In this document: one piece after another, positions 17,566 to 63,925 of the stretch
Position numbering within the stretch: the stretch's first letter is position 1
Layout of the letters: every line of letters starts with the position of its first letter
DNA from: Octopus bimaculoides
Lineage: Eukaryota
Direction of reading: 5' to 3'
Length of the DNA: 64,000 nucleotides
NCBI RefSeq assembly: GCF_001194135.2
Contig: NC_068998.1
Coordinates: 32,327,361 to 32,391,360 of the forward strand
Made by a program: the position numbers and the translations under genes
The notes under the pieces: generated by a model
Told to the model about the DNA's origin: nothing
The model's database searches: none
The model's input: the letters and a program-made list of their open reading frames with translations, nothing else

Positions 17566-18731
17566 TAAAGGTATACGATCCTTTATCCCCCAAACCGAAC
17601 ATTTTTGCGGAGGTTGGAGCATGTCATAACAGGAGTTGTTTGGTGCACAAACAGCTGATCACCATGATCAGACTCACTCAGGTATGATGTGACAACACTT
17701 GGCAGGTCGGCTACCACTTACCACCAAGCATCAGATGTGGTTGAGCACTTATAGAGAAGACATCCATTTGCTGTTTTGTTGTCTTCGTGTTGTTCTTATG
17801 ACTATATATAATTTACCCTGTAAATGTCAAAAGGAACTGCAGATACCCCAATGGATAATAGTGACAACAACACACCTGTTGTGTGCATGAGTGATTGGGA
17901 AATTACTGAAATGGTGTTAAATATGTATAAGAATGAAGACAGTAGTGATGATGACATAGAGAACACTGCTGAAAAACTTCTTATGGACGATATAGTGAAA
18001 ATTTGTGATCAGTTAATAGCTGGTCTTGATCAACGTGCATTTATCATTGAGCAACAGATTATGGGAGTTTGCTCAATTAAAGAGACATTGCTTAGACAGA
18101 AACCTATACTAATGAGACAGCTGGCACTTGAAGAAGTCTTCAAAAATACCCTGTCTCTTAGTGTTACTTCATCACTTGAGAATCTCGTTCCTGGTTCATC
18201 ATCAGAAGTTTGCCTGCAACCTGATGACAATGTTGGCGACACCGATGGACCCTGTTCTACAAATTATCCGCAGCTACACATTTAGCCTAGTTTGAACCAA
18301 TTTCTGGCTCTAACAAATAAATAAACTGTAATACCATTTATAGTCTTTCTTTATTCAAATTAGTGTGAATATTTAGGCACCTCTCTACAGAAATATTACA
18401 GTAATGTGTACACCTGTAAATGTGGTTCGTGTATTTTTGTTTTAAATTATCCTACTATATGTATTTTGTTATTTGTGACATTAATTATCTCACTATTTCA
18501 TTTACCAGTATATTACTCTATAAATAAACTGTAATAATATTTGTAATTGTCTTTTTTTCCCATTGATCGTGAGGATGTGTACATGTGCTTTTGATACCAT
18601 AATAGGATGTCTATTTTGATGTGTAGTTTACAATCTGAGGCAGCTTGTTTTTTGTTCTGAAATCCAAAAGAATCTAAAATTCAGAACACAACTGTCCCCA
18701 AGGGTTCTGAATAAAGGATTGTGCACCTGTA
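17566..18731 (+). mobile_element. pogo/Tigger-family internally deleted DNA transposon
   Basis: Imperfect TIRs taaaggtatacgatcctttatcc / gaataaaggattgtgcacctgta (18 of 23 match). ORF 17824-18285 encodes a Tigger-type C-terminus (CDQLIAGLDQRAFIIEQQIMGVCSIKETLLRQKP). Confidence 0.8.
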
Positions 18732-18990
18732 GTAGTTTACTAGCAAAGAAAGATTTTCATTTTTACTTGCAAAGAATTGTAGACAAGTCAGGTCTGATGG
18801 CCTGCACAAGATCTCCTAGGTTGATGTGATTGATACTATTAATGTTCTGGGAAAACTGTTGAAAGTTGGCAGCTAAAAAGAAGACTTACAGGGAGGGATA
18901 TTCCAGAGAAATGATATTCTGGTCAGGAAGATTTTGTGAAGTTATGTACATATAAATATATAAATGTGTGTGTGTCTGTGTAAAGATGAT

Positions 18991-19037
18991 ACACATGGAC
19001 TCGAGTTTCTGGGTGGTTACCCATTCTCAGCATGTGT
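18991..19037 (-). ncRNA. Minimal type I hammerhead ribozyme motif, copy 1
   Basis: Minus strand reads ACACAUG-CUGAGAA-UGGGU-AACC-ACCCA-GAAAC-UCGA-GUC/CAUGUGU. It has a 7-bp stem I, a 5-bp stem II, a 2-bp stem III within the palindrome ACUCGAGU, and a GUC cleavage triplet. The core has one deviation (CUGAGAA vs CUGANGA). Confidence 0.8.
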
Positions 19038-19320
19038 TAATCACCAGCTAGTGATGAAAACTCACCCCACTCGCAAAATACTATATGTTTTTCCCAGCGA
19101 TGAAATAAGCTATATTAAATCTGAGTGAGATGTAAACAGTAGCAATATGGAATTGTAACATACAATTGCCAACCAAGTGTGGCGTCCTATATGGGGCAGT
19201 GCTACTGACGTTTATAGCCCCAGGAAGACATCTCCCCCAGATGGCTAACAACATGCATTCTGTGTCCGATTAATATTTGTAAGGGGAAGTCATCGCTCCC
19301 AACCCTAGCTTTATGTGATG

Positions 19321-19365
19321 CACATGGACTCAAGTTTCTGGGTGGTTACCCATCCTCAGTATGTG
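19321..19365 (-). ncRNA. Minimal type I hammerhead ribozyme motif, copy 2
   Basis: Minus strand reads CACAUA-CUGAGGA-UGGGU-AACC-ACCCA-GAAAC-UUGA-GUC/CAUGUG. The CUGANGA and GAAA core and the GUC triplet are perfect. There is an A:C mismatch at the closing pair of stem I. Confidence 0.8.
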
Positions 19366-19705
19366 TTAATCACCAGCTAGTGATGAAAACTCACCCCACT
19401 CACAAAATTCTATATGCTTTTTCCAGTGATGAACTGATACTGATCTTGAAAAAGGGGAAACAAGCTATATTAAATCTTTGAGCAAGATGTAAACAGTAGC
19501 AACACGACATCCATATCTGTTAACGGTTATTTTCAATACTTTTCTTGCTGGATTGCATGCTTGTTTCTCTTTTTGTCATTTGCGATTTTATTTTTGATCT
19601 TCTATATAAATGAAGATATTTCCTCTGTCTGCCTGTTTTTCTCTCTACAAAACGGAAAGTTACATTGTGGAGCAGTCATTTTAATGAGTTGTATTTATTT
19701 ATCAC

Positions 19706-20233: not shown

Positions 20234-20253
20234 NNNNNNNNNNNNNNNNNNNN
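20234..20253. other. Assembly gap (20 N) within (TA)n
   Basis: Run of N. Confidence 0.99.
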
Positions 20254-20348: not shown

Positions 20349-21583
20349 GGGATGTTTCTTAAAGATTTCCCTTGACCCACTTCTGATTATTTCAGGAAAT
20401 AGAACTTGTACAGATATAATCATACATGTCTCTATATGTCACATTGTAAATTGCAGCTTTCCACTAGTATTTGTCTGTCTTTTACGGCTGCTAAAGTAGA
20501 CTAAGGTGTTATAATGGAGACAGTTAATGCAGATTAGTGATCAGGTTCTTATACTTGAAAGGGCATACACCAAAAGAGACTTTCGATGAGATGAAAGACG
20601 TTTATGGTGACAATGCACCATCATATGACATAATCAAGTACTGGCATCACCAAATCAAATGTGGTCAGACATTGGCGGAAACTGCTCCTGTTCTTGGACG
20701 TCCATATTCCGCCATTGATGATGACACCATCCATAAAGTGGAAGCCGTTATTTTGGAGGATTGCTGCATAACTATTTGTCAACTAGCCCAAGAAGTGAAC
20801 ATAAGTGTAGGGTTCATGGAAAAAATCATTCACAACCATTTGCACATGTGGAAGTTGTTTGTGTGATGGATTCCCTGGATGCTCACACCTTTTTTAGAAG
20901 CAGGAACAAGTCAATTGCTCCCAGTCTCATATGGCAATGTGCCAAGAAAACGAGGAAGACATTTTGGGTAGATTTATCACACAGGATGAAACATGGGTCC
21001 ATCGCTATGATCCTGAGACTAAAATCCAGTTGAAACAATGGAAGCATGATAACTCACCACCTCCAAAGATGGCTCATGTCCAACCCTCAGCAGGCAAGGT
21101 GATGCTCAGTCTTTTGGGACCAATGCAGAGTAGTGATGATGGATTTTCTGGCAAAGGGCACCACAATTAATGGGGCATATTATGCTTCTCTGCTGCAGAA
21201 ACTGTGGGACACTATCAAAGCAGAGAGGCATGGCATGCTGACCAAAGGAGTCTGTCTTCTCCAAGACAATGCCCCAGTTCTCAATGCGCATGTTGCCCAG
21301 ATGAAAGCACACTCCTGCAGCTATGAAATCCTTCCTCATCCCCCTTACTGTCCTGACCTCACACCATCTGACTTCTACCTCTTCCCAGCCATGAAGGTAA
21401 AGTCATGGCTCCTGACACAACCTACTGACTTCTACAGATGAAGTCTTCACAGCTACATAAAGCGATGGGAGATGTGTGTCACCATTGGTGGTGGTTATGT
21501 AGAGAAGGACTAATAATTATGCTAAGTTTCATTTATCCCACTACTTAGGGAGTGGGTCAGGGTAAATCTTTAATGAACACCCC
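20349..21583 (+). mobile_element. Near full-length mariner (DD34D), pseudogenised
   Basis: About 33-bp imperfect TIRs at 20349-20381 and 21551-21583. ORF pieces 20537-20866, 20931-21170 and 21133-21441 contain ITQDETWVHRYDPE, LQDNAP and PYCPDLTPSDF, with 34 residues between the 2nd and 3rd Asp. Confidence 0.93.
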
Positions 21584-34638: not shown

Positions 34639-35022
34639 NNNNNNNNNNNNNNNNNNNNNNNNNNNNNNNNNNNNNNNNNNNNNNNNNNNNNNNNNNNNNN
34701 NNNNNNNNNNNNNNNNNNNNNNNNNNNNNNNNNNNNNNNNNNNNNNNNNNNNNNNNNNNNNNNNNNNNNNNNNNNNNNNNNNNNNNNNNNNNNNNNNNNN
34801 NNNNNNNNNNNNNNNNNNNNNNNNNNNNNNNNNNNNNNNNNNNNNNNNNNNNNNNNNNNNNNNNNNNNNNNNNNNNNNNNNNNNNNNNNNNNNNNNNNNN
34901 NNNNNNNNNNNNNNNNNNNNNNNNNNNNNNNNNNNNNNNNNNNNNNNNNNNNNNNNNNNNNNNNNNNNNNNNNNNNNNNNNNNNNNNNNNNNNNNNNNNN
35001 NNNNNNNNNNNNNNNNNNNNNN
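34639..35022. other. Assembly gap (384 N) between (GA)n and (TA)n
   Basis: Run of N. Confidence 0.99.
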
Positions 35023-37896: not shown

Positions 37897-38795
37897 GCGT
37901 ACAGGTGTAGGAGTTCACCAAGGATCAGTTCTCAGCCTCCCCCGCTCTTGTTTATTATAGTACTCCAGGCCTTAACAGAGGGATTCAAGACTTGCTGCTC
38001 CTAGGAGCTCCTCTACACTGATGACCTTGTTCTTGCAGCTGAATCACTATCTGACCTTGAGATGAAATTTCAGCTGTGTAAGCAAGGTATGGAATCTAAC
38101 AGCCTTAGTTAATTGAGCAAAGACCAAAGTACTAATAAATTGGAAAACAGACAAATCACAAGTCTCTTCAGGAAGATGGCCCTGCTCGATATGTAAGAAG
38201 GATGTTGATAAAAATTCTATATGTTGTATCCAGTTCAAGCATTGGATACATAAGAGGTGCAGTGCTATCACATGAAAGTTAACAGAGAAATAGTCTTTAT
38301 GTGTGGCAAATGTGTGGGTACAATAAGTTATAAAAATGTACAGAGAATAGATTTCTACAAATGCTCCAGGGAATCTGTAGAAGTGGTAGATAGCTTCTGT
38401 TACCTAAGAGACCAAGTTAACAATGTGGGAGGAAATTCTGAAAAGGAAATTGCTTGAATAAGAATAGGCTGGGCAAAGTTCAGAGAGCTGCAACCTTTGT
38501 TAGTAACTAAGGGCCTCCCAAGCAAAGTGAATGGCAGATTATATGATACCTGTGTATGTTCAGTTATACTACATGGTGGTAAAACATAGGCTATGACTAC
38601 AGAGGACTTGCAAAGGCTTGAAAGAAATGAAGCTAGCATGCTCCACTGGATGAGTAATGTCAGTGTGGGTTGGCCATACAAAGTATGCCATAACAGACAA
38701 CTGGAGTTTCAACAGCTCTCCAGCTGGCCACCTCCTGCCAAACCATTCAACACATGCCAGCATGGAAAACGGACATTGAACGACGATGATGATGT
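37897..38795 (+). mobile_element. RTE LINE fragment (RT domain to 3' tail)
   Basis: Encodes GVHQGSVLSP, LLYTDDLVLAAES and RIGWAKFREL. Ends with a gacgatgatgatg tail. Confidence 0.88.
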
Positions 38796-39852
38796 CCTTT
38801 TTTAAGACAGTAGGATGAGATCTGAAGGAAAATTAGCTACTATTTTTAGCAGTTCACTTGGCTCGTTTGGTTTGCCTGTTGTAATAAGATACACGAACAT
38901 GATAGAGACCTTAAAGGTTAAATACATTAGTTCCAGAAGTGCCATATTACCCCAACCTCCCCTTTCCTCCCCTCCTCCTCCTCCTCTTCATCATCATCAT
39001 CATCATCATCATCACTGCCAATAAACCATTGTTTGACATGTATTTCTCCATGTTGAAATAGCTGGCATCACAACATATCTCTCATTATCAGTATTCTGTC
39101 ATATCTCTAACCAAAAGACTAAGCCACAGTTATTTTTATTGATGCATCACAAAAACGTTGATTTTATAGAAATCTATCAATGGTATATGGTTATTGCTAC
39201 TGTTGTTGTTCCTGACATTGTTGATGTTGTTGTCGATGAGAACCAGTCCCAATAAACTCTTGGAGCAGATCAATGAAACAGAGAGAGCCAATCAAATGAG
39301 TTCTTATTTCTTAATGTTTGCAGCATTTTAAAAAATTATTCTTTAGTTGAACATCTAATTTTCTGGCATATTGAACTGCAAATTTTTGTTTTATTATCCC
39401 CCTTTTTACAGAAAAAAAAATTTTTTTTTTAAATCCACATATTTCATCGTAATCAATATTATGGTTGGAAAATTTCTATAAGAATAATTGTGCAGATTTC
39501 CTTATTGTTAAAATAGTAATATAAGAAGTATGTCAATCCAATAGTTCTTTTACTTTTTTAATGTTGAACTTCAATGGGAAAATATGATTTGGATTGATTT
39601 TTGTTTTGGAGTAACACACACTTAAGATGCTGCTTTACTCACAGTAAAATATAACAAGCTTGTTAGTTTATCTTATAAATATATCCTAACTTATCTTAAC
39701 TATGTTTGTGATTTCATATCACCTTTTTTCATAAATCTACATCTGTAATTTATGCATATATATACATATAGTCACTTATACCAGTGCATATATACTTATA
39801 AGAGTATATGATTTTTTTATATGGATACACATATACATATGCTTGTATGTGT

Positions 39853-43034: not shown

Positions 43035-44645
43035 TGTACAGTGATGCTGTCAGTAAGGTGAGGTTTGGCAACAAGTACAGTAAGAATTCCGGGTAGAGGT
43101 AGGTGTCCACGAAGGTTCAGTCCTCAGCCTCCTCCTATTTATCATAGTCCTCCAGGCAATAACAGAGGAATTCAAGACAGGATGTCCCTGGGAGCTCGTC
43201 TATGCTGATGACCTTGCACTGATTGCTGAGTCTCTAATAGAACTAGAGGAGAAGTTTCAGGCATAGAAGCAAGGATTAGAATCGAAGGGCCTTAGAGTCA
43301 ATCTAGCTAAAACCAAAGTCCTAATAAGTAGGAAGGCAGACAAACCACAAACCCCTTCAGGTAGATGGCCCTGCTCAATCTGTAGAAAAGGTCTAGGTAG
43401 AAACTCTATAAGATGTATCCAGTGTAAGATATGGACACATAAGAGGTGCAGCAATATCAAAGGAAGGCTAACTGGGAAGATAGTTTTTGTATGTGGCAGA
43501 TGCACAGGAGCAATAAACACCGAAAATGTGCAGAGAACAACTTCTGCCACATTCCAGGGAGAAAAACTACAAGTAGTTGATAGCTTCTGTTACCTAAGTC
43601 AGTAGCTGGAAAGGGTGCGCTGAAAGTGTAGCTGCTAGAATAAGAATAGCCTGGGCAAAGTTCAGAAAGCTCTTACCTCTGCTGGTGACAAAGGGCCTCT
43701 CGCTCAGAGTAAAAGGCAGACTGTATGATGCATGTGTATGAACAGCCATGCTACATGGCAGTGAAACATGGGCCATGACTGCTGAGGACATGCATAAGCT
43801 CGCAAGGAGTCTCCACTGGATGTGTAATGTCAGTGTGCATACTCGACAGAGTGTTAGTACCTTAAGAGAAAAGTTGAACCTAAGAAGCATCAGTTGTGGT
43901 GTGCAAGAGAGACGACTGTGCTGGTCTGGTCATGTGGTGAGAATGAATGAGGATAGCTGCATGAAAAAGTGTCACACACTGGCGGTTGAGGGAACCTGTG
44001 GAAGAGGTAGACCCAGGAAGACCTGGGATGTGGTAGTGAAGCATGACCTTCGAACATTAGGCCTCACCAGGGGTGTAACCAGCCCACTTATGCATACCTT
44101 TCCTTCATTGGGCACTAAACTCTGCCTGCGAAGACCTGTTGAGGCAAGTGAAATTGAAATCGAATCAAATTCAATGACTGACACCCATGCCAATGGAGCA
44201 CTAAGAGCACCATCCAAGTGTGATCATTGCCAGAGCAGCTGACTGGCTTCCATGCCAGTGACATGCAAAAAGCACCATTCGAGCGTGATCGTTACCAGCA
44301 TTGCCTTACTGGCACTTGTGCCAGTGGCATGTGAAAAAAACATTCGTGCGAGGTCGATGCCAGTGCCACTGGACTGGCTCCTGTGCAGGTAGCACATGTA
44401 AAACACCATTTGAGCATGGCCATTGCCAGTACCGTCTGACTGGCCCTCATGCTGATGGCATGTAAAAGCACCCACTACACTCTCAGAGTGGTTGGCGTTA
44501 GGAAGGGTATCCAGCTGTAGAAACTCCGGCAGATCAGATTGGATCCTGGTGCAGCCATCTGGTTCACCAGTCCTCAGTCAAATCGTCCAACCCATGCTAG
44601 CATGGAAAGTGGACGTTAAACGATGATGATGATGATGTTGATGAT
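43035..44645 (+). mobile_element. RTE LINE, 5'-truncated, with 3' UTR and (GAT)n tail
   Basis: Encodes ELVYADDLALIAES, MLHGSETWAMTAED and GTCGRGRPRKTWD (ORF 43748-44242), with frameshifts and stops. Confidence 0.92.
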
Positions 44646-45719: not shown

Positions 45720-47200
45720 TCCATTGTGAAATGTTTTTTATTGTTTTTAATTAATATCTAGGGTTTTGTGATCAACGTTCTGTGTCCTCAGAATGGTGCA
45801 ATCATTGAAGTAAGGATTCCAGCTATGTAATTGATATTCATAGAAGCATTTGCTGTGATTTAGGCTACATTGTTCATTCCTTTAGACTTTTAGATATACT
45901 ATGATCAGTTGGCATAAGTTGGGGTAACTATCATTCCCATTGCAGTCCCTAGTATTTTGTAAATGATGTTTAAAAATTGTTTTGCTAGATGATTTATATT
46001 ATTTCAGTGATGATCCTGTTTCTTATTTGATAAAAATTTTCATCTGAGTGATTTAACCTGTCCATATATTTCAGAATAGGTTTCAGGAGTATGTTGTCAA
46101 AGTTACTGGAGGTGTTTCAATGGTTAGGCCTGCTATAATTGATCTTAATTTAAGATCATTGGAGAATCTTCCATTTATACATATTTAAGTTGTTTTCTTA
46201 CAAACAACATATATTATTTTGCTCTTTTAGAGTTTGAAAGTCTGTAGAAACTGCTGTTTTTGCATTCAAATTTCATTTAGAAGACCTATTTCGTGTTTGC
46301 TAATTTTTTTACGGTAGGTAAATGATGGTACTGAGTTTCTTCATCATTTCTGATTGTTGATAATTGCCTACTATTTTATAATAACCAACAGCCAGTGGTA
46401 CATGCAAATTCCATTGACTGCTTCACAAAATATTATCTTTTAATCTTATCGTTTTGTTGTTATTGTATTTAGTGACAATTACTTGGTTTTTGTCAAGTTT
46501 TCTGTAACAACTGTTCGTTCTTAAGTCCAAATTATGGCTTGTTCTGTCTGGGATTTTTTGCAAGTTATAATCCCTGCATGTTTTGATTTTGCAATCTTTG
46601 GTAATAGGAGATAGTCTGTCTTAAGAGATAGGAGCTTTGGAGTCTTCTAGTTAAGTTGTTACATTGTTTAAATACTCTGGAATTAATGATATTGTTTTTG
46701 TATTCTTAGTGGTTACAATTTTTACTTTTTGATACTTGTACAGTTTGTGAATAGAGTTTGTAGATTTGGCTTTTAGCAGTAATGTGTTAACAGTATACTT
46801 CTTGAATTTCTTTTCATAATTGCTTAATCAATTAACAGTCACCCCTCATTTCTAAAAAAAATGTTAATGTTTCATTTTCACACCTTTTTCTCTCCTAACT
46901 TTAACATTGTTCTTATGTAAAGATCTTCATTTTCCTTTCTTAAATTTCCACTTCTATATATTTATTTTATCAGTTGATTTGAATTTTTGTTTAGTGGAAT
47001 TTCCTTTTGTCGTAATAATTCAGTTTTGACTTTGAAGATGTCAAAAGCCATCTTCTTTCTAAGTTTTCTTTGTGGTTCAACTTCATTATTGATAGGTTTC
47101 ATTTCTAATTTTCTGAGAAGAGCAACTGGTATTGAATTAATCCAGATTTCAAGTATTTCAATTTTGCTGCTTTTTTTTCTACATGTACACACATTATACA
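45720..47200 (-). mobile_element. Penelope-like element RT remnant
   Basis: Decayed motifs appear in the expected order: SNDLKLRSIIAG (~46130-46170), QILGTAMGMIVTPTYAN (~45905-45960) and WNPYFNDCTIL (YxDD-like, ~45795-45825). The N-terminal part is less certain. Confidence 0.75.
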
Positions 47201-50759: not shown

Positions 50760-52250
50760 TATTTCTCTATCGCTAGATATGTTTGTACAGAATATTGAAA
50801 ATGAACGACACCACTTGTATGACATCATCATCATCATTGTTTAACATCTGATTGCCATGCTGGACTGGGTTGGATGGTTCAACAGACAAACTCCAATTGC
50901 CTGTTGTGGCATGGTTTCTACAGCTGGATTCCCTTCCTACCACCAACCACTTTACAGGGTGTGCTGGGTGCTTTTTATATACCACTGGTATGGGTGCATT
51001 GATGTAGCACTGGTGTGAATACATTTTATGTAGCTCCAACACCTGCAAAGTACAAGCTTGTATTGATGACAATGATTTTACTTAGCTTAACACATCTTTT
51101 CAAGTAGAGTAAATTGCTGCAACTTGCAGTCCCTTGTCATTTTCTCAGTGAAGCCCAGCCTCTGAAGATCCTTTCTTACCACTCTGTTCCACATCTTCCT
51201 AGGTCTACTCTTTCCAAAAATTCCCTCCACAATTAGAGCTTGGCACTCTTTTAAGCAGCTGTCCTCATCCATATGTATCATATGACCAAACCAGTGCAGT
51301 CATCTCTCTTGTATACAACATCTGATACATCTTATACTCAGTTTCCCTCTTAAATCATTTACACTCTCTTGTGCAGGCACAATAACATTACCCATCCAGC
51401 AGAGCATGCTAACTTCATTTCTTTCAAGCCTTCGCAAGTTCTCTGAATCAAAACCCATGTTTCACTGCCATGTAGCATAGCTGTACATACAGAGGCATCA
51501 TACAATCTGCTATTCACTCTGAGGTAGAGGCCCTTTGTCACCAACAAAGGTTGTAGTTCTCTGATCTTTACCAAGCCCATTCTTATTCTTGGAATTACAC
51601 TTTCAGAACTTGCCCCTCCACTGCTAACTTGCTCTCCGTGGTAACAGAAGCTATCTACTACTTCTAATGATTCTCCTCAAGCATTTGTGGGAGTCTATTG
51701 TTTGCGCATTTTTAGTGCTTGTTGTAGCTGCACATTTGCCACACACAAAGACTATATTCTCTGTTAACCTTCCTGTGATACTGCTACGCCTCTTATGTGT
51801 CCAAAGCTTGTACTGGATACAATGTATGGAGTTTCTACCGAAGGGACTTGTAATTTGTTTGTTGTCTGCTCAATTAACTCAAAGGCCCTGAGATTCGAGG
51901 CCTTCCTTCCACACCAGATATTTCTTCTCTAGGTCAAGTAGTGATTCAGCTATAAGAACAAGGTCATTAGCAAAGAGGAGCTGTCAGGAGCAACTAGGCT
52001 TGAATTTGTCTATTAGGGTCTGGAGGACTAAGATAAACAAGAAGGGGCTGCAAAGTGAACCTTGATGAACTCCTACACCTGTGCACTGAATTCATTGCTA
52101 TACTTGTTTCCAACCTTCACTTTACTGGCAGCGTCCCTGTACATGGCTGGTACAGCTCTCACTAACCACTCATCTATTCTTAGCTTCCACATTGACCATT
52201 AGATAAGTGAACAGAGCTTTCTCCATGTTGACAAAAGCCAAGTACAGAGG
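50760..52250 (-). mobile_element. RTE LINE, 5'-truncated
   Basis: Encodes LQPLLVTKGL...RLYDASVCTAMLHGSETW and GKSRPRKMW. The (CAT)n tail is at ~50823. Same family as the 43-kb copy, in opposite orientation. Confidence 0.9.
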
Positions 52251-57383: not shown

Positions 57384-58273
57384 CAAGGTAGTATCCAAAA
57401 GTTCTCAGACTAGTTCTGTAGCATGCCAACAGACAGCAGCACATGGTTGCATGTGCAGTGAGACATAGCAGGTAGCAGTGACCTTCATGAAGCAGTGTGC
57501 CAAGTGACATCACTCTGTTTACTTCACAAGTTGTGAAATTTGTGTTTTTGTGATCACATGTATGCTGGACAAGAACAAAGAGTTAATGTGAAATTTTGTG
57601 TTAAACTTGGGAAAACTGCTACAGAGGCATTGAGCCTGCTTCAGCAAGCTTATGGCAATGAGGCAATGAGTTGTATGCAATGTTTCAAAAGCAGAAAAGT
57701 GTCCCTGGAAGATTATGAGTGATCTGGAAGACCTGCCATGAGTGTCACCCCTGGAAATGTGATATTGTGCATAGAGAAGTCATCCTTCAGGGCCAGAGCA
57801 TCATTGAGAGTTCAACTGTGACGTTTTGAAGTGTTTGAGGGAGGACATTCGGCAAAAGCGAAAGGATCTGTGGAATACGAAGAATTGGGTTCTTCGTGAT
57901 GACGATGCACCTGATCACTGTGCTCTCCCCACTCATGGGTTTTTCATCAAAAACAACATGGTATCACTTCTGTACCCACTCTATTCACCAGATTTCACAC
58001 CTGTGGACTTCCGTCTTTTGCCCAAGATGAAAATGCAGCTCAAAGATCACTGTTTTAACACTGTTGTTGAGATCCAGAGTGAATTGCAGAAAGTCCTCGA
58101 CTTGCTTATAGGAAAATGACTTCCAGGCTGATTCCAAAATTGGTAGGGATGCTGGGACTAGTGTATCACTGTGCAAGATGACTATTTCGAAGGAGATGAT
58201 GTTAAAACTTAGGTAAATAAGTTATTTTTTTTATTAAGCATAACTAGTTCAGTAACTTTTTGATACTATCTCA
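57384..58273 (+). mobile_element. Mariner element, internally deleted, both TIRs and TA target duplication retained
   Basis: TIRs caaggtagtatccaaaagttctcagactagtt / aactagttcagtaactttttgatactatctca, with TA on both sides. Encodes QRVNVKFCVKLGK and LYSPDFTPVDFRLLP. Confidence 0.9.

Positions 58274-62765: not shown

Positions 62766-62842
<77 letters not shown>
62766..62842. repeat. (TA)n microsatellite
   Basis: Direct reading. Abuts the 3' end of the Penelope-like element. Confidence 0.95.
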
Positions 62843-62846
<4 letters not shown>

Positions 62847-63925
62847 CTGGGTGCAGGGGTATGACTACCTACTACTTATATTTCCTATTTAGTACTGAGG
62901 ATGTTTCATTTGTGAGGACATACTCCTGTATTTGTCTGAGAGTTGGGTCTTTCAGGTGCTTGGATAAAATGTGGATGTCAAGTCGCTTTGCTCGACTAAA
63001 GGCAGTACTCCAACATGGCTGCAGTCAAATGACTAAAACAGGTAAAAGAGTAAAAGAGTAAATGAATATGTGGTGGTTAAGGATATACATGAACTAAGGT
63101 TATCTTAAGGCAACGAGGAAAATGAAACTATAGAAACTAAATTGGTCCTTGATGTGTTGGTAGAGTATCGAGGACTGTCTTTTGTCATCATATTGTCTCA
63201 AATGTGCATTTAGTCTTTCCACAATGCTCCTAGATGTTTCACCTATGTATATCATGTTCTTGTCTTTGCAAGTACCTTCTATGCACCTTATTTTGTAGAC
63301 TACATTTCTAGTTCTACAGTTAATGCCTGGGTCAATGTTACACACCATGCAGTTATCATTGGTGCATGTGGTATTCTCAAAAGAGTACGTCCTACATAGT
63401 TGTGATCTGATTGAGCTCTCTGGCTTTTCAACGATCATAATGTTGAGTTTGGCCTCCTTCAGAGCTTTCCTAAATCTACAGGCTAGTTCTCCATGGGCTG
63501 TGGCCTCTACAAGCATCACTCCTTGATATTGTCAGTCTTGTACCATGTGTACCATTTGTTGGTCTTGTACCCTGTTTGCTTTGTCACAAACTCTTTGTAT
63601 TCTATTCCAGTCTTTACTTCTGTATCTAAGGCAGTTACCACTGGTTTCGTTACATATAATGTTATTTAACTTCTTTTTAGCACCCCTGTATACCTGGACC
63701 CTATCTCTCTGACCATATCCAGAGAATTGCATGTGGTGCATCAAGTTCTGTATATGTTTCTTCATTACATAGGGTTTGCATTGCAGGGATACGTTCATTA
63801 TCCTGAGTCTGCTATCAGTATGTTGATTTTCATGTGTGACAAAGCTGAGCTCTTGTGAACAACATATTTCAAAGCTATGGGTTTCATGTAATAGAAGTGG
63901 AGTAGCTACACTCTGTTGTTCACAA
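62843..63925 (-). mobile_element. Penelope-like element 3' part with GIY-YIG endonuclease, interrupted
   Basis: ORF 63100-63519 has a Cys-rich linker plus NVVYKIRC...IYIGETSRSIVERLNAH. The frame resumes after an insertion as LDIHILSKHLKDPTLRQIQEYVLTNETSSVLNRKYK*. Flanked by (TA)n and (CT)n. Confidence 0.9.

What the first reader, a model, noticed from the sequence alone, without database searches (positions are those of the whole stretch)
18986..19502. Tandem hammerhead ribozymes 329 nt apart: a candidate retrozyme / circular-RNA-producing element
Seen: two direct repeats, each holding a minimal type I hammerhead fold on the minus strand. The consensus is CACAUG-CUGAGGA-UGGGU-AACC-ACCCA-GAAAC-UCGA-GUC/CAUGUG, with predicted cleavage sites at 19327/19326 and 18998/18997, and the unit has no ORF. 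Established: small non-coding tandem repeats of a few hundred bp with type I hammerheads (newt satellite 2, Schistosoma SM-alpha, metazoan retrozymes) and Penelope-like element termini self-cleave into monomers that can circularise. Their short palindromic stem III favours a dimeric fold. Inference: this is a non-autonomous ribozyme-bearing retroelement family, possibly mobilised by Penelope-like RTs, remnants of which are in this window. I cannot tell from here whether it is already catalogued. Caveat: the stem II closing pair is U-A rather than the usual G-C.
Basis: partly seen in the sequence, partly recalled or inferred. Interest (0 to 1): 0.85.

Follow-up and report, generated by a model that had tools for sequence, protein, structure and literature searches.

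The report
Decayed hammerhead-ribozyme repeat (animal retrozyme)
A 521-bp non-coding repeat holds two mutated copies of a self-cleaving hammerhead RNA motif: it is an old, probably dead insertion of an already described class of animal mobile elements (retrozymes, or Penelope-derived repeats), so it is real but ordinary.

Summary
The quoted "consensus" exists in neither copy. Copy A (19366-19320) has an intact CUGAGGA core but an A.C mismatch at the inner pair of helix I. Copy B (19037-18991) has a perfect helix I but CUGAGAA, which is G8-to-A in the catalytic core. Rfam gives no hit at gathering score: copy B scores 13.7 bits against 34, and copy A scores nothing.

The array is 1.46 units, R1-U-R2. 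R2 carries a 26-nt deletion, so the ancestral unit is about 357 nt, not 329. R1 and R2 differ by about 8%.

The family is real. An antisense-translation search found two further copies, about 75% identical, lying head-to-head on Logan contigs. They keep 10 of the 11 fixed core columns. Partial tandem, inverted 5'-truncated partner and microsatellite ends match Penelope-like integration.

This fits the published metazoan non-LTR retrozyme / PLE-derived class, as a fossil copy unlikely to release a circular RNA from this locus. The host organism and the genomic copy number could not be determined. Interest is low: a new member of a known kind.

The parts
19316..19502 (-). R1, the upstream copy of the direct repeat (187 nt). 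It starts at TTGCTACTG (19502) and ends about 11 nt past the hammerhead cleavage site. It keeps the 26-nt segment 19435-19460 that R2 has lost.
19314..19374 (-). Hammerhead copy A. Outer helix I extension GGUGAU (19374-19369) / AUCAC(A) (19319-19314); UA bulge (19368-19367); helix I ACACAUA (19366-19360) / CAUGUGC (19326-19320); core CUGAGGA (19359-19353), intact; helix II UGGGU-AACC-ACCCA (19352-19339); GAAA (19338-19335); helix III C-UUGA-G; GUC with C17 at 19327. Defect: A at 19360 gives an A.C at the inner helix I pair.
19146..19315 (-). U, a single-copy spacer of 170 nt between the repeats. It is homologous to the same part of the two copies on L014, so it belongs to the unit (unit R1+U = 357 nt).
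18987..19145 (-). R2, the downstream copy of the repeat (159 nt). It is 92.5% identical to R1 (11 transitions, 1 transversion, K2P 0.081) and has a 26-nt and a 2-nt deletion.
18985..19045 (-). Hammerhead copy B. Extension GGUGAU (19045-19040) / AUCAUC (18990-18985); UA bulge; helix I ACACAUG (19037-19031) / CAUGUGU (18997-18991), 7 perfect pairs; core CUGAGAA (19030-19024) with A at 19025 in place of G8; helix II 19023-19010; GAAA 19009-19006; helix III C-UCGA-G; C17 at 18998.
   Evidence: (RF00163, 13.7 bits, model positions 1-45/45)
18940..18984 (.). (CA)n/(TA)n microsatellite directly abutting the 3' end of the array on the element's strand. It is the likely insertion target, as described for PLE-type integration.
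   Evidence: (family D1)

Best explanation
This is a fossil insertion of a short non-autonomous retroelement of the metazoan non-LTR retrozyme kind. That kind is now argued to derive from the terminal repeats of Penelope-like elements.

The family unit is about 357 nt, non-coding and 41-43% GC. It carries one canonical metazoan type I hammerhead: helix I of 7 bp continued past a UA bulge by 5-6 more pairs, helix II of 5 bp with an AACC loop, and helix III of 2 bp with a 4-nt palindromic loop.

Inferred life cycle, from the published class. A multimeric transcript folds its hammerheads, probably pairwise through the helix III palindrome. It cleaves after GUC into unit-length RNAs whose ends are held together by helix I. 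A host tRNA ligase circularises these. A PLE reverse transcriptase/endonuclease copies them back into microsatellite targets, leaving partial tandems and inverted 5'-truncated partners.

At this locus the inserted 1.46-mer (R1-U-R2) has decayed: about 8% divergence between R1 and R2, a 26-nt deletion in R2, G8->A in copy B and a helix I mismatch in copy A. It most likely no longer releases a monomer or a circle.

Shown here: the motifs, their defects, the repeat anatomy, family members elsewhere and the insertion architecture. Inferred: transcription, cleavage, circularisation and PLE dependence.
For: - Motif and repeat coordinates are as read.
- Copy B aligns end to end with Rfam RF00163, model positions 1-45/45.
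- The two-copy consensus passes a strict descriptor that hit once in 400 dinucleotide shuffles.
- The family is found independently. The antisense translation of the hammerhead region retrieved P0004. P0004 sits on Logan contigs L014/L015, which carry two further copies at 68-76% identity covering R, the hammerhead and U.
- Across the 4 copies, 1 of the 11 fixed core columns varies, against 18 of 36 non-core columns (Fisher p 0.016).
- 82.5% of cells pair in the proposed structure, against 14-51% when partners are slid.
- The L014 copies and 2 of the 4 copies respectively carry the 'good' alleles, G8 and G at position 2.1. So the window's defects are derived, at least for G8.
- Class features are met: unit length about 330-360 nt, GC 41-43% (published value below 45%), no ORF above 57 aa, short palindromic helix III (PMC7229834; PMC4209133).
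- PLE-type insertion features are present. The window holds a partial tandem. L014 holds a head-to-head inverted 5'-truncated copy. There is a microsatellite at the 3' end in the window (18940-18984) and in L014 (positions 1-46). Copy endpoints are circularly permuted.
- A PLE-type endonuclease remnant (GIY-YIG preceded by C-TNDN-C-MV-C) is in the same window, so PLEs have been present in this genome.
- The 2026 preprint shows pLTR-retrozyme relatedness in Xenopus.
Against: - No Rfam family reaches its gathering score. Copy A, L014plus and L014minus are not detected at all.
- Neither window copy passes a strict descriptor.
- The pair at the base of helix II is U-A in the window and C.A in both L014 copies, instead of the near-universal G10.1-C11.1.
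- With only 4 sequences there is no significant covariation. There is one compensatory pair, and it can be explained by CpG decay on both strands. Shuffle controls are not exceeded.
- The hammerhead segment is not better conserved than the rest of the unit: 70-79% against 67-81%.
- The 329-nt monomer does not fold significantly better than shuffles (z -1.44), whereas published retrozyme RNAs are 'highly self-paired'.
- There is no other copy in the 64-kb window. The genomic copy number and the host organism are unknown.
- The element has no sequence similarity to the PLE remnant in the window.
Confidence: 0.75

Rival explanations
1. It is not a dedicated non-autonomous element. It is a heavily 5'-truncated insertion of an autonomous Penelope-like element, of which only the 3' tail and the pseudo-LTR (R-U-R) remain.
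For: PLE insertions are typically strongly 5'-truncated, form partial tandems (pLTRs), carry hammerheads in the pLTR and prefer microsatellites (PMC8557442; PMC4209133). The window array and the L014 head-to-head pair have exactly these features.
Against: - None of the three loci continues into RT/EN coding sequence.
- Published PLE hammerheads are mostly 'minimal' variants, with helix III absent or 1 bp, a long helix II and a short helix I. This one has the canonical metazoan type I architecture associated with retrozymes.
- There is no similarity to the PLE remnant at 62.9-63.5 kb.
- The distinction is partly semantic if retrozymes derive from pLTRs.
Confidence: 0.15
2. The locus is still functional. 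The two hammerheads cleave, perhaps as a double hammerhead, and release a 329-nt RNA that is circularised.
For: - Copy A has an intact 11-nt core.
- Helix I/II/III geometry is kept in both copies.
- The helix III palindromes of A and B can pair (8 bp with one G.U), and cofolding favours the dimer by about 2.7 kcal/mol.
Against: - Copy B has A in place of G8. The 2'-OH of G8 is the proposed general acid, and G8 is one of the invariant core residues (PMC6155905). Strong loss of activity on G8 substitution is established knowledge.
- In the double-hammerhead fold each site uses the other copy's core. One site would therefore use the G8A core, and the other would use copy A's strand with the A.C mismatch.
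- The 8% R1/R2 divergence and the 26-nt deletion show neutral decay.
- Weak or absent Rfam scores.
Confidence: 0.05
3. The hammerhead resemblance is fortuitous. This is an ordinary local duplication or an unrelated short repeat.
For: - A relaxed descriptor gives about 0.5 hits per shuffled window, plus one unrelated hit at 46930-46859.
- The pattern CTGANGA-N14-GAAAC with up to 1 mismatch is expected 1.07 times by chance.
- No Rfam support at gathering score.
- No significant covariation.
Against: - The strict-consensus chance rate is about 1 in 400 windows.
- Copies about 25% diverged from another source keep CUGA, G8, A9, GAAA and U16.1. The sole core change in any copy is G8A in copy B, and the cleavage triplets stay within UH (GUC, GUC, GUA, UUC).
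- The architecture matches the published canonical metazoan type I hammerhead point by point.
- The motif sits in a roughly 350-nt non-coding unit with PLE-like insertion features.
Confidence: 0.03
4. The element carries a short protein-coding frame on the strand antisense to the ribozyme.
For: - There is a stop-free stretch of 87 codons at 19218-19478 (+).
- The same frame is open in R2 and in L014minus.
- Over 49 ungapped codons omega is 0.29, against a null median of 0.66 (2.2% of 3000 simulations as low).
- Substitutions follow pos3 > pos1 > pos2 in all three comparisons.
Against: - The frame was picked post hoc from six, and P0004 was found by a protein search, so ascertainment is biased.
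- Phase chi-square p values are 0.03, 0.26 and 0.42.
- A 13-nt indel and two stops break the frame in the L014 copies.
- 6.8% of shuffles of the unit have an equally long open stretch.
- There is no Pfam family, and no homologue other than P0004.
Confidence: 0.02

Closest known systems
Metazoan non-LTR retrozymes (Cervera & de la Pena, NAR 2020, PMC7229834)
   Same: - Type I hammerhead inside a roughly 170-400 bp non-coding, low-GC unit arranged head to tail.
- Helix III of 2 bp capped by a tetraloop.
- Unit size like the mussel (350-390 bp) and axolotl (330/350 bp) families.
- Coexists with PLEs in the genome.
   Different: - Here there are only 1.46 units, against dimers up to 62-mers in the literature.
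- Both ribozymes are mutated.
- The base of helix II is U-A or C.A, not G-C.
- Expression as circular RNA and high self-pairing are not shown (z -1.44).
- Copy number is unknown.
Penelope-like element pseudo-LTRs and their hammerheads (Cervera & de la Pena 2014, PMC4209133; Craig et al. 2021, PMC8557442; Li et al. 2026 preprint 10.64898/2026.07.22.740005)
   Same: - Partial tandem giving a direct repeat that contains the hammerhead.
- An inverted 5'-truncated copy at the 5' end (L014).
- Microsatellite insertion sites.
- Palindromic helix III suited to dimeric action.
- A PLE endonuclease remnant in the same window.
   Different: - No RT/EN ORF between or next to the repeats.
- The hammerhead is of the canonical type I form, not the 'minimal' PLE form.
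- No demonstrated sequence similarity to any PLE terminus.
Newt satellite 2 and Schistosoma SM-alpha hammerhead repeats
   Same: Short non-coding repeats of about 330 bp with a type I hammerhead. Newt ribozymes act as dimers through an extended helix III (PMC6155905).
   Different: Those are high-copy families with demonstrated transcription and self-cleavage, and their helix II base pair is the usual G-C (from my own knowledge). Here none of this is shown and the sequence is unrelated. No match was found in the papers or supplement searched.
Plant LTR retrozymes (PMC4918200)
   Same: Non-autonomous, flanked by direct repeats that each carry a hammerhead, and propagated through circular RNA.
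   Different: Plant elements use type III hammerheads, roughly 350-bp true LTRs with PBS/PPT, GC above 55% and Ty3/gypsy machinery. None of that applies here.

Membership tests
Hammerhead ribozyme, type I (Rfam RF00163) | Conserved core: C3 U4 G5 A6 N7 G8 A9 ... G12 A13 A14 A15.1 ... U16.1 H17 | tested here: inconclusive
   Copy A has all core residues (CUGAGGA...GAAA...GUC). Copy B has A in place of G8 (19025). The L014 copies have intact cores. Met for the family consensus, not for every copy.
Hammerhead ribozyme, type I (Rfam RF00163) | Three helices around the core, helix I open (type I topology) | tested here: met
   The 20 proposed pairs have 82.5% of cells paired in 4 copies, against 14-51% with slid partners. 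Helices I and II appear in MFE folds.
Hammerhead ribozyme, type I (Rfam RF00163) | Score at or above Rfam's gathering threshold (34 bits) | tested here: not met
   0 hits at gathering score in the window. Copy B scores 13.7 bits, E 0.71, in an 81-nt search. Copy A and L014 give no hit.
Hammerhead ribozyme, type I (Rfam RF00163) | G10.1-C11.1 pair closing helix II (near-universal in natural hammerheads; from established knowledge) | tested here: not met
   U-A in both window copies and C.A in both L014 copies.
Hammerhead ribozyme, type I (Rfam RF00163) | Site-specific self-cleavage after H17 | not testable with these tools
   Needs in vitro transcription and mapping of the cleavage products.
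Hammerhead ribozyme, type I (Rfam RF00163) | Covariation supporting the helices | tested here: inconclusive
   There are only 4 sequences. One pair changes on both sides (U-A to C-G), which CpG decay can explain. 186-362 of 500 shuffles reach the observed values.
Metazoan non-LTR retrozyme | Head-to-tail repeats of a 170-400 bp monomer, each with a type I hammerhead | tested here: met
   R1-U-R2 is 1.46 units of about 357 nt (329 nt between cleavage sites after a 26-nt deletion), with one hammerhead per R. This is the minimal case: dimer-like, not a long array.
Metazoan non-LTR retrozyme | Non-coding, low GC (below 45-50%), no LTR/PBS/PPT | tested here: met
   Longest ORF 57 aa. GC 43.2% for the monomer and 41.1% for the array. 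PBS/PPT were not specifically searched.
Metazoan non-LTR retrozyme | Multi-copy family in the genome | tested here: inconclusive
   No other copy in the 64 kb. Two diverged copies on Logan contigs from runs of unknown organism. The genome was not available.
Metazoan non-LTR retrozyme | Highly self-paired monomer RNA | tested here: inconclusive
   MFE -92.8 kcal/mol, z -1.44, with 11 of 100 shuffles as stable. This is a decayed, deleted copy, so it is not a fair test of the family.
Metazoan non-LTR retrozyme | Expressed as linear and circular RNA of unit length | not testable with these tools
   Needs RNA-seq junction reads, or northern blot / RNase R.
Non-autonomous derivative of a Penelope-like element | PLE-type insertion architecture (partial tandem, adjacent inverted 5'-truncated copy, microsatellite target) | tested here: met
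   Window: partial tandem ending in (CA)n(TA)n. L014: minus copy 261->47 head-to-head with plus copy 266-~650, with its 3' end in a (GT)n/(GC)n tract. Criteria taken from PMC8557442.
Non-autonomous derivative of a Penelope-like element | Sequence similarity of the unit to the 3' end or pLTR of an autonomous PLE in the same genome | tested here: not met
   No similarity to the only PLE remnant in the window. The genome-wide test was not possible.
Non-autonomous derivative of a Penelope-like element | Autonomous PLEs present in the host genome | tested here: inconclusive
   There is a GIY-YIG ORF at 63100-63519 (-) (Pfam PF01541, 25.3 bits against a cut-off of 22.6) preceded by CX4CXXC, as in Neptune-type PLE endonucleases. 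No RT domain was found upstream, and protein searches found no homologues.

The most novel reading that the evidence does not exclude
This could be an uncatalogued retrozyme family whose master copies are still active, with a hammerhead that works without the canonical G10.1-C11.1 pair: U-A here, C.A in the related copies. That would widen the known natural sequence space of the ribozyme core periphery. More speculatively, the strand antisense to the ribozyme may carry a short frame under purifying selection (omega 0.29 over 49 codons, nominal p about 0.02).
Probability: 0.12. Interest if true: 0.5.

Novelty: new member of a known kind. Interest (0 to 1): 0.2.

Why it matters
It adds one more, apparently undescribed, sequence family to the animal hammerhead repeats. 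It is also a small independent example of retrozyme-like units showing Penelope-type insertion architecture: partial tandem, inverted truncated partner and microsatellite targets. That agrees with the recent proposal that animal retrozymes derive from PLE pseudo-LTRs.

For genome annotation the practical point is that decayed copies like this escape Rfam at curated thresholds. The locus itself is a fossil, so nothing here changes what is known about ribozyme biology.

Tried and rejected
- Rfam at gathering score on the whole window, and at E<=10 on 1.5 kb, gave no hammerhead. Only an 81-nt search gave a weak RF00163 hit, for copy B.
- A strict descriptor scan of the window found nothing. The relaxed scan adds one unrelated hit at 46930-46859, which is at chance level.
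- blastn of the element against the window found no further copy.
- Pattern scans of metagenome contigs returned 13 hits, all unrelated sequences. Some look like other hammerhead types, for example L004/L005. Two scans of viral contigs found nothing.
- The search for homologous proteins was run on a 57-aa spurious ORF, on the GIY-YIG ORF and on a concatenate of all spurious ORFs. All found nothing.
- The search of protein representatives on the antisense translation worked and returned P0004. Its other hits are not relatives: P0001 is a 62-nt satellite without a hammerhead core, and I took P0002, P0003 and P0005 for chance matches from their sequences (long repetitive proteins) without further checks.
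- Organism identification failed. Exact look-ups of five window ORFs were not on record. The run accession prefix led only to an unrelated paper. The hammerhead sequence was not found in the paper library or in the NAR 2020 supplement.
- The bacterial promoter/terminator scan is irrelevant for a eukaryotic window.
- The coding hypothesis for the antisense frame was considered and set aside.
Full report
WHAT IS THERE. On the minus strand the region reads R1 (19502->19316), a single-copy spacer U (19315->19146) and R2 (19145->18987). R1 and R2 are 92.5% identical over 159 aligned bases, with 11 transitions, 1 transversion and K2P 0.081. R2 lacks 26 nt that R1 has at 19435-19460, plus 2 more.

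Copy A is ACACAUA-CUGAGGA-UGGGU-AACC-ACCCA-GAAAC-UUGA-GUC-CAUGUGC. Its core is intact, but A at 19360 makes an A.C at the inner helix I pair. Copy B is ACACAUG-CUGAGAA-...-GAAAC-UCGA-GUC-CAUGUGU. Its helix I has 7 perfect pairs, but A at 19025 replaces G8. The longest ORF in the element is 57 aa.

IS IT MORE THAN CHANCE? Curated tools do not see it.
- Rfam at gathering score gives nothing in the window.
- At E<=10 over 1.5 kb there is no hammerhead.
- In 81-nt searches copy B matches RF00163 end to end at 13.7 bits (gathering score 34, E 0.71), and copy A gives nothing.
- A strict descriptor finds neither copy.
- A relaxed one finds both plus an unrelated site, and hits shuffled windows about 0.5 times. 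A single degraded copy would therefore not be convincing.

Three things make the motif credible. First, the consensus of the two copies passes a strict descriptor that hit once in 400 dinucleotide shuffles of the window. Second, the architecture matches the published 'canonical metazoan type I' hammerhead: helix I about 6 bp, helix II 4-5 bp, and helix III 1-2 bp capped by a small palindromic loop (PMC4209133). Third, independent copies exist, as described next.

FAMILY MEMBERS ELSEWHERE. DNA pattern scans of the metagenome and viral collections returned only unrelated sequences. Three word-indexed protein searches returned nothing.

Translating the strand opposite the hammerhead (DTHGLEFLGGYPFSACVNHQ...) and searching the representative library found P0004, a 103-aa spurious ORF. 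It lies on Logan contigs L014/L015 (SRR11869391, SRR11869385). These contigs carry two copies of the same unit at 68-76% identity, head to head:
- a plus copy, L014:266 to about 650, made of the last 35 nt or so of U, then R with its hammerhead, then most of U;
- a minus copy, L014:261->47, made of a 5'-truncated R with its hammerhead and then U to its end.

The plus copy contains the 26-nt segment missing from R2.

In the 4-copy hammerhead alignment only 1 of the 11 fixed core columns varies (G8A in copy B), against 18 of 36 other columns (Fisher p 0.016). 82.5% of cells pair in the proposed structure, against 14-51% with slid partners. Both L014 copies have G8, and two of the four copies have G at position 2.1.

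Weaknesses:
- Both L014 ribozymes are also damaged in their stems.
- All four copies lack G10.1-C11.1 (U-A or C.A).
- There is no significant covariation. The single U-A to C-G double change is what CpG decay on both strands would give.
- The hammerhead is no better conserved than the rest of the unit.
- The 329-nt monomer is not unusually stable (z -1.44).

This is the picture expected of dead copies decaying neutrally. It cannot prove selection on the ribozyme.

INSERTION ARCHITECTURE AND THE PENELOPE LINK. Craig et al. describe four PLE insertion features: strong 5' truncation, partial tandems that create pseudo-LTRs, an inverted 5'-truncated copy adjacent to the 5' end, and a bias for (CA)n/(TA)n microsatellites. 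They also describe non-autonomous derivatives that form pLTRs and head-to-tail multimers (PMC8557442).

The window array is a partial tandem whose 3' end abuts (CA)n(TA)n at 18940-18984. L014 shows the inverted head-to-head pair, with the minus copy ending in a (GT)n/(GC)n tract. Copy endpoints are permuted relative to one another. The window starts at the start of R and ends 11-13 nt past the cleavage site. L014minus ends at the end of U. L014plus starts inside the end of U. This fits multimeric or circular templates better than a linear unit with fixed ends, though that inference rests on three loci.

The window also holds a PLE-type endonuclease remnant: a GIY-YIG domain (Pfam 25.3 bits) preceded by C-TNDN-C-MV-C at 63100-63531 (-). 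It ends in a (TA)n tract. No RT domain was detected upstream, and it has no similarity to the element.

HOW IT MOST LIKELY WORKS. By analogy with the published class (PMC7229834; PMC6155905), the steps are as follows.
- A multimeric transcript of a master array folds its hammerheads.
- The weak 2-bp helix III with its palindrome (ACUCGAGU) favours pairing of two neighbouring ribozymes into a double hammerhead. Cofolding of A and B gives -41.3 kcal/mol, against -38.6 for the two monomers.
- Cleavage after GUC gives unit-length RNA whose ends are clamped by helix I. The MFE of the monomer does pair its two ends.
- A tRNA ligase circularises the RNA, and a PLE RT/EN reinserts it.

All of these steps are inferred, not shown. 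At this locus G8->A in copy B removes an invariant core residue, whose 2'-OH is the proposed general acid. Copy A has a mismatch next to the core. In the double-hammerhead fold each site borrows the other copy's core, so neither site has a clean ribozyme. With 8% R1/R2 divergence and a 26-nt deletion, I regard the locus as a fossil.

COMPARISON AND NOVELTY. The thing is a member, by architecture, of the metazoan non-LTR retrozymes and PLE-associated hammerhead repeats. Retrozymes derived from PLE pLTRs are already proposed in a 2026 preprint. The particular sequence was not found in the paper library or in the one supplement searched, and Repbase/Dfam could not be queried. I therefore file it as a new member of a known kind. 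The host organism could not be identified. The window is a 34% GC eukaryotic draft with N gaps, many CA/TA microsatellites, and mariner, non-LTR and PLE debris.

SIDE OBSERVATION. The frame antisense to the ribozyme is stop-free for 87 codons in R1-U. Over 49 ungapped codons against L014minus it shows omega 0.29, where the null median is 0.66 and 2.2% of simulations are as low. Substitutions follow pos3 > pos1 > pos2.

The frame was chosen post hoc and the partner was found by a protein search. The frame is broken by a 13-nt indel and by stops in the L014 copies. Equally long open stretches occur in 6.8% of shuffles. I treat it as probably chance, but it should be rechecked when many copies are available.

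Noticed in passing
window 62870-63531 (-): Remnant of a Penelope-like element endonuclease. The ORF at 63100-63519 has a GIY-YIG domain preceded by a C-x4-C-x2-C linker, and no RT domain was detectable upstream. By eye, the coding sequence seems to be interrupted by a roughly 120-170 bp insertion around 62970-63140, then resumes and ends at a long (TA)n tract (62770-62850).
   Followed up: partly
window 20528-21438 (+): Frameshifted mariner/Mos1-type transposase about 1 kb from the element. Pfam hits are HTH_48 (4.6e-10) and Transposase_1 (9.8e-10), spread over three frames. By eye, a similar fragment lies at 57808-58116 (+), without a Pfam hit.
   Followed up: partly
window 43267-44239 (+), 51090-51676 (-), 38590-38802 (+): By eye, ORFs carrying or resembling the 'MLHGSETWAMT...' motif, which I read as C-terminal fragments of a non-LTR retrotransposon ORF2 family. 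The first follows a PHD/C1-like zinc finger at 43267-43602. No RT Pfam hit was obtained for the pieces tested.
   Followed up: partly
window 19218-19478 (+), and 18964-19128 (+): The reading frame antisense to the hammerhead is open for 87 codons and shows a weak coding-like substitution pattern against the L014 copy (omega 0.29, nominal p 0.02). It is not robust to ascertainment and multiple frames, and it is broken in the other copies.
   Followed up: partly
window 17824-18285 (+): A 153-aa acidic ORF just downstream of the array on the element's strand (lower coordinates). It has no Pfam family and no exact record in the contig collection. Its nature is unknown.
   Followed up: partly
window 20234-20253 and 34639-35022: Runs of N (assembly gaps) flanked by TA microsatellites. 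The window is a draft eukaryotic assembly, so repeat arrays near gaps may be collapsed.
   Followed up: no
L004:2135-2160 (-) and L005:7593-7618 (-), metagenome contigs JACCDO010739159.1 and JACCDO010565612.1: Sequences of the form ACUAGUUU-CUGAUGA-AGGGUAUUCACCCA-GAAAC-UAGUC. They look like hammerheads of another topology, with an A/A at the base of helix II, and are unrelated to the window's family.
   Followed up: no
L016:3001-4422 (ENA ERZ21930238 ctg26102l): A 62-nt tandem satellite translated as a 473-aa 'protein' (P0001). It matched the query only by chance and has no CUGANGA...GAAA core.
   Followed up: yes
window 46859-46930 (-): The only other relaxed-descriptor hammerhead-like hit in the window. 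It has one core mismatch and an AT-rich 5-bp helix I, and is at the level expected by chance (about 0.5 per shuffled window).
   Followed up: yes
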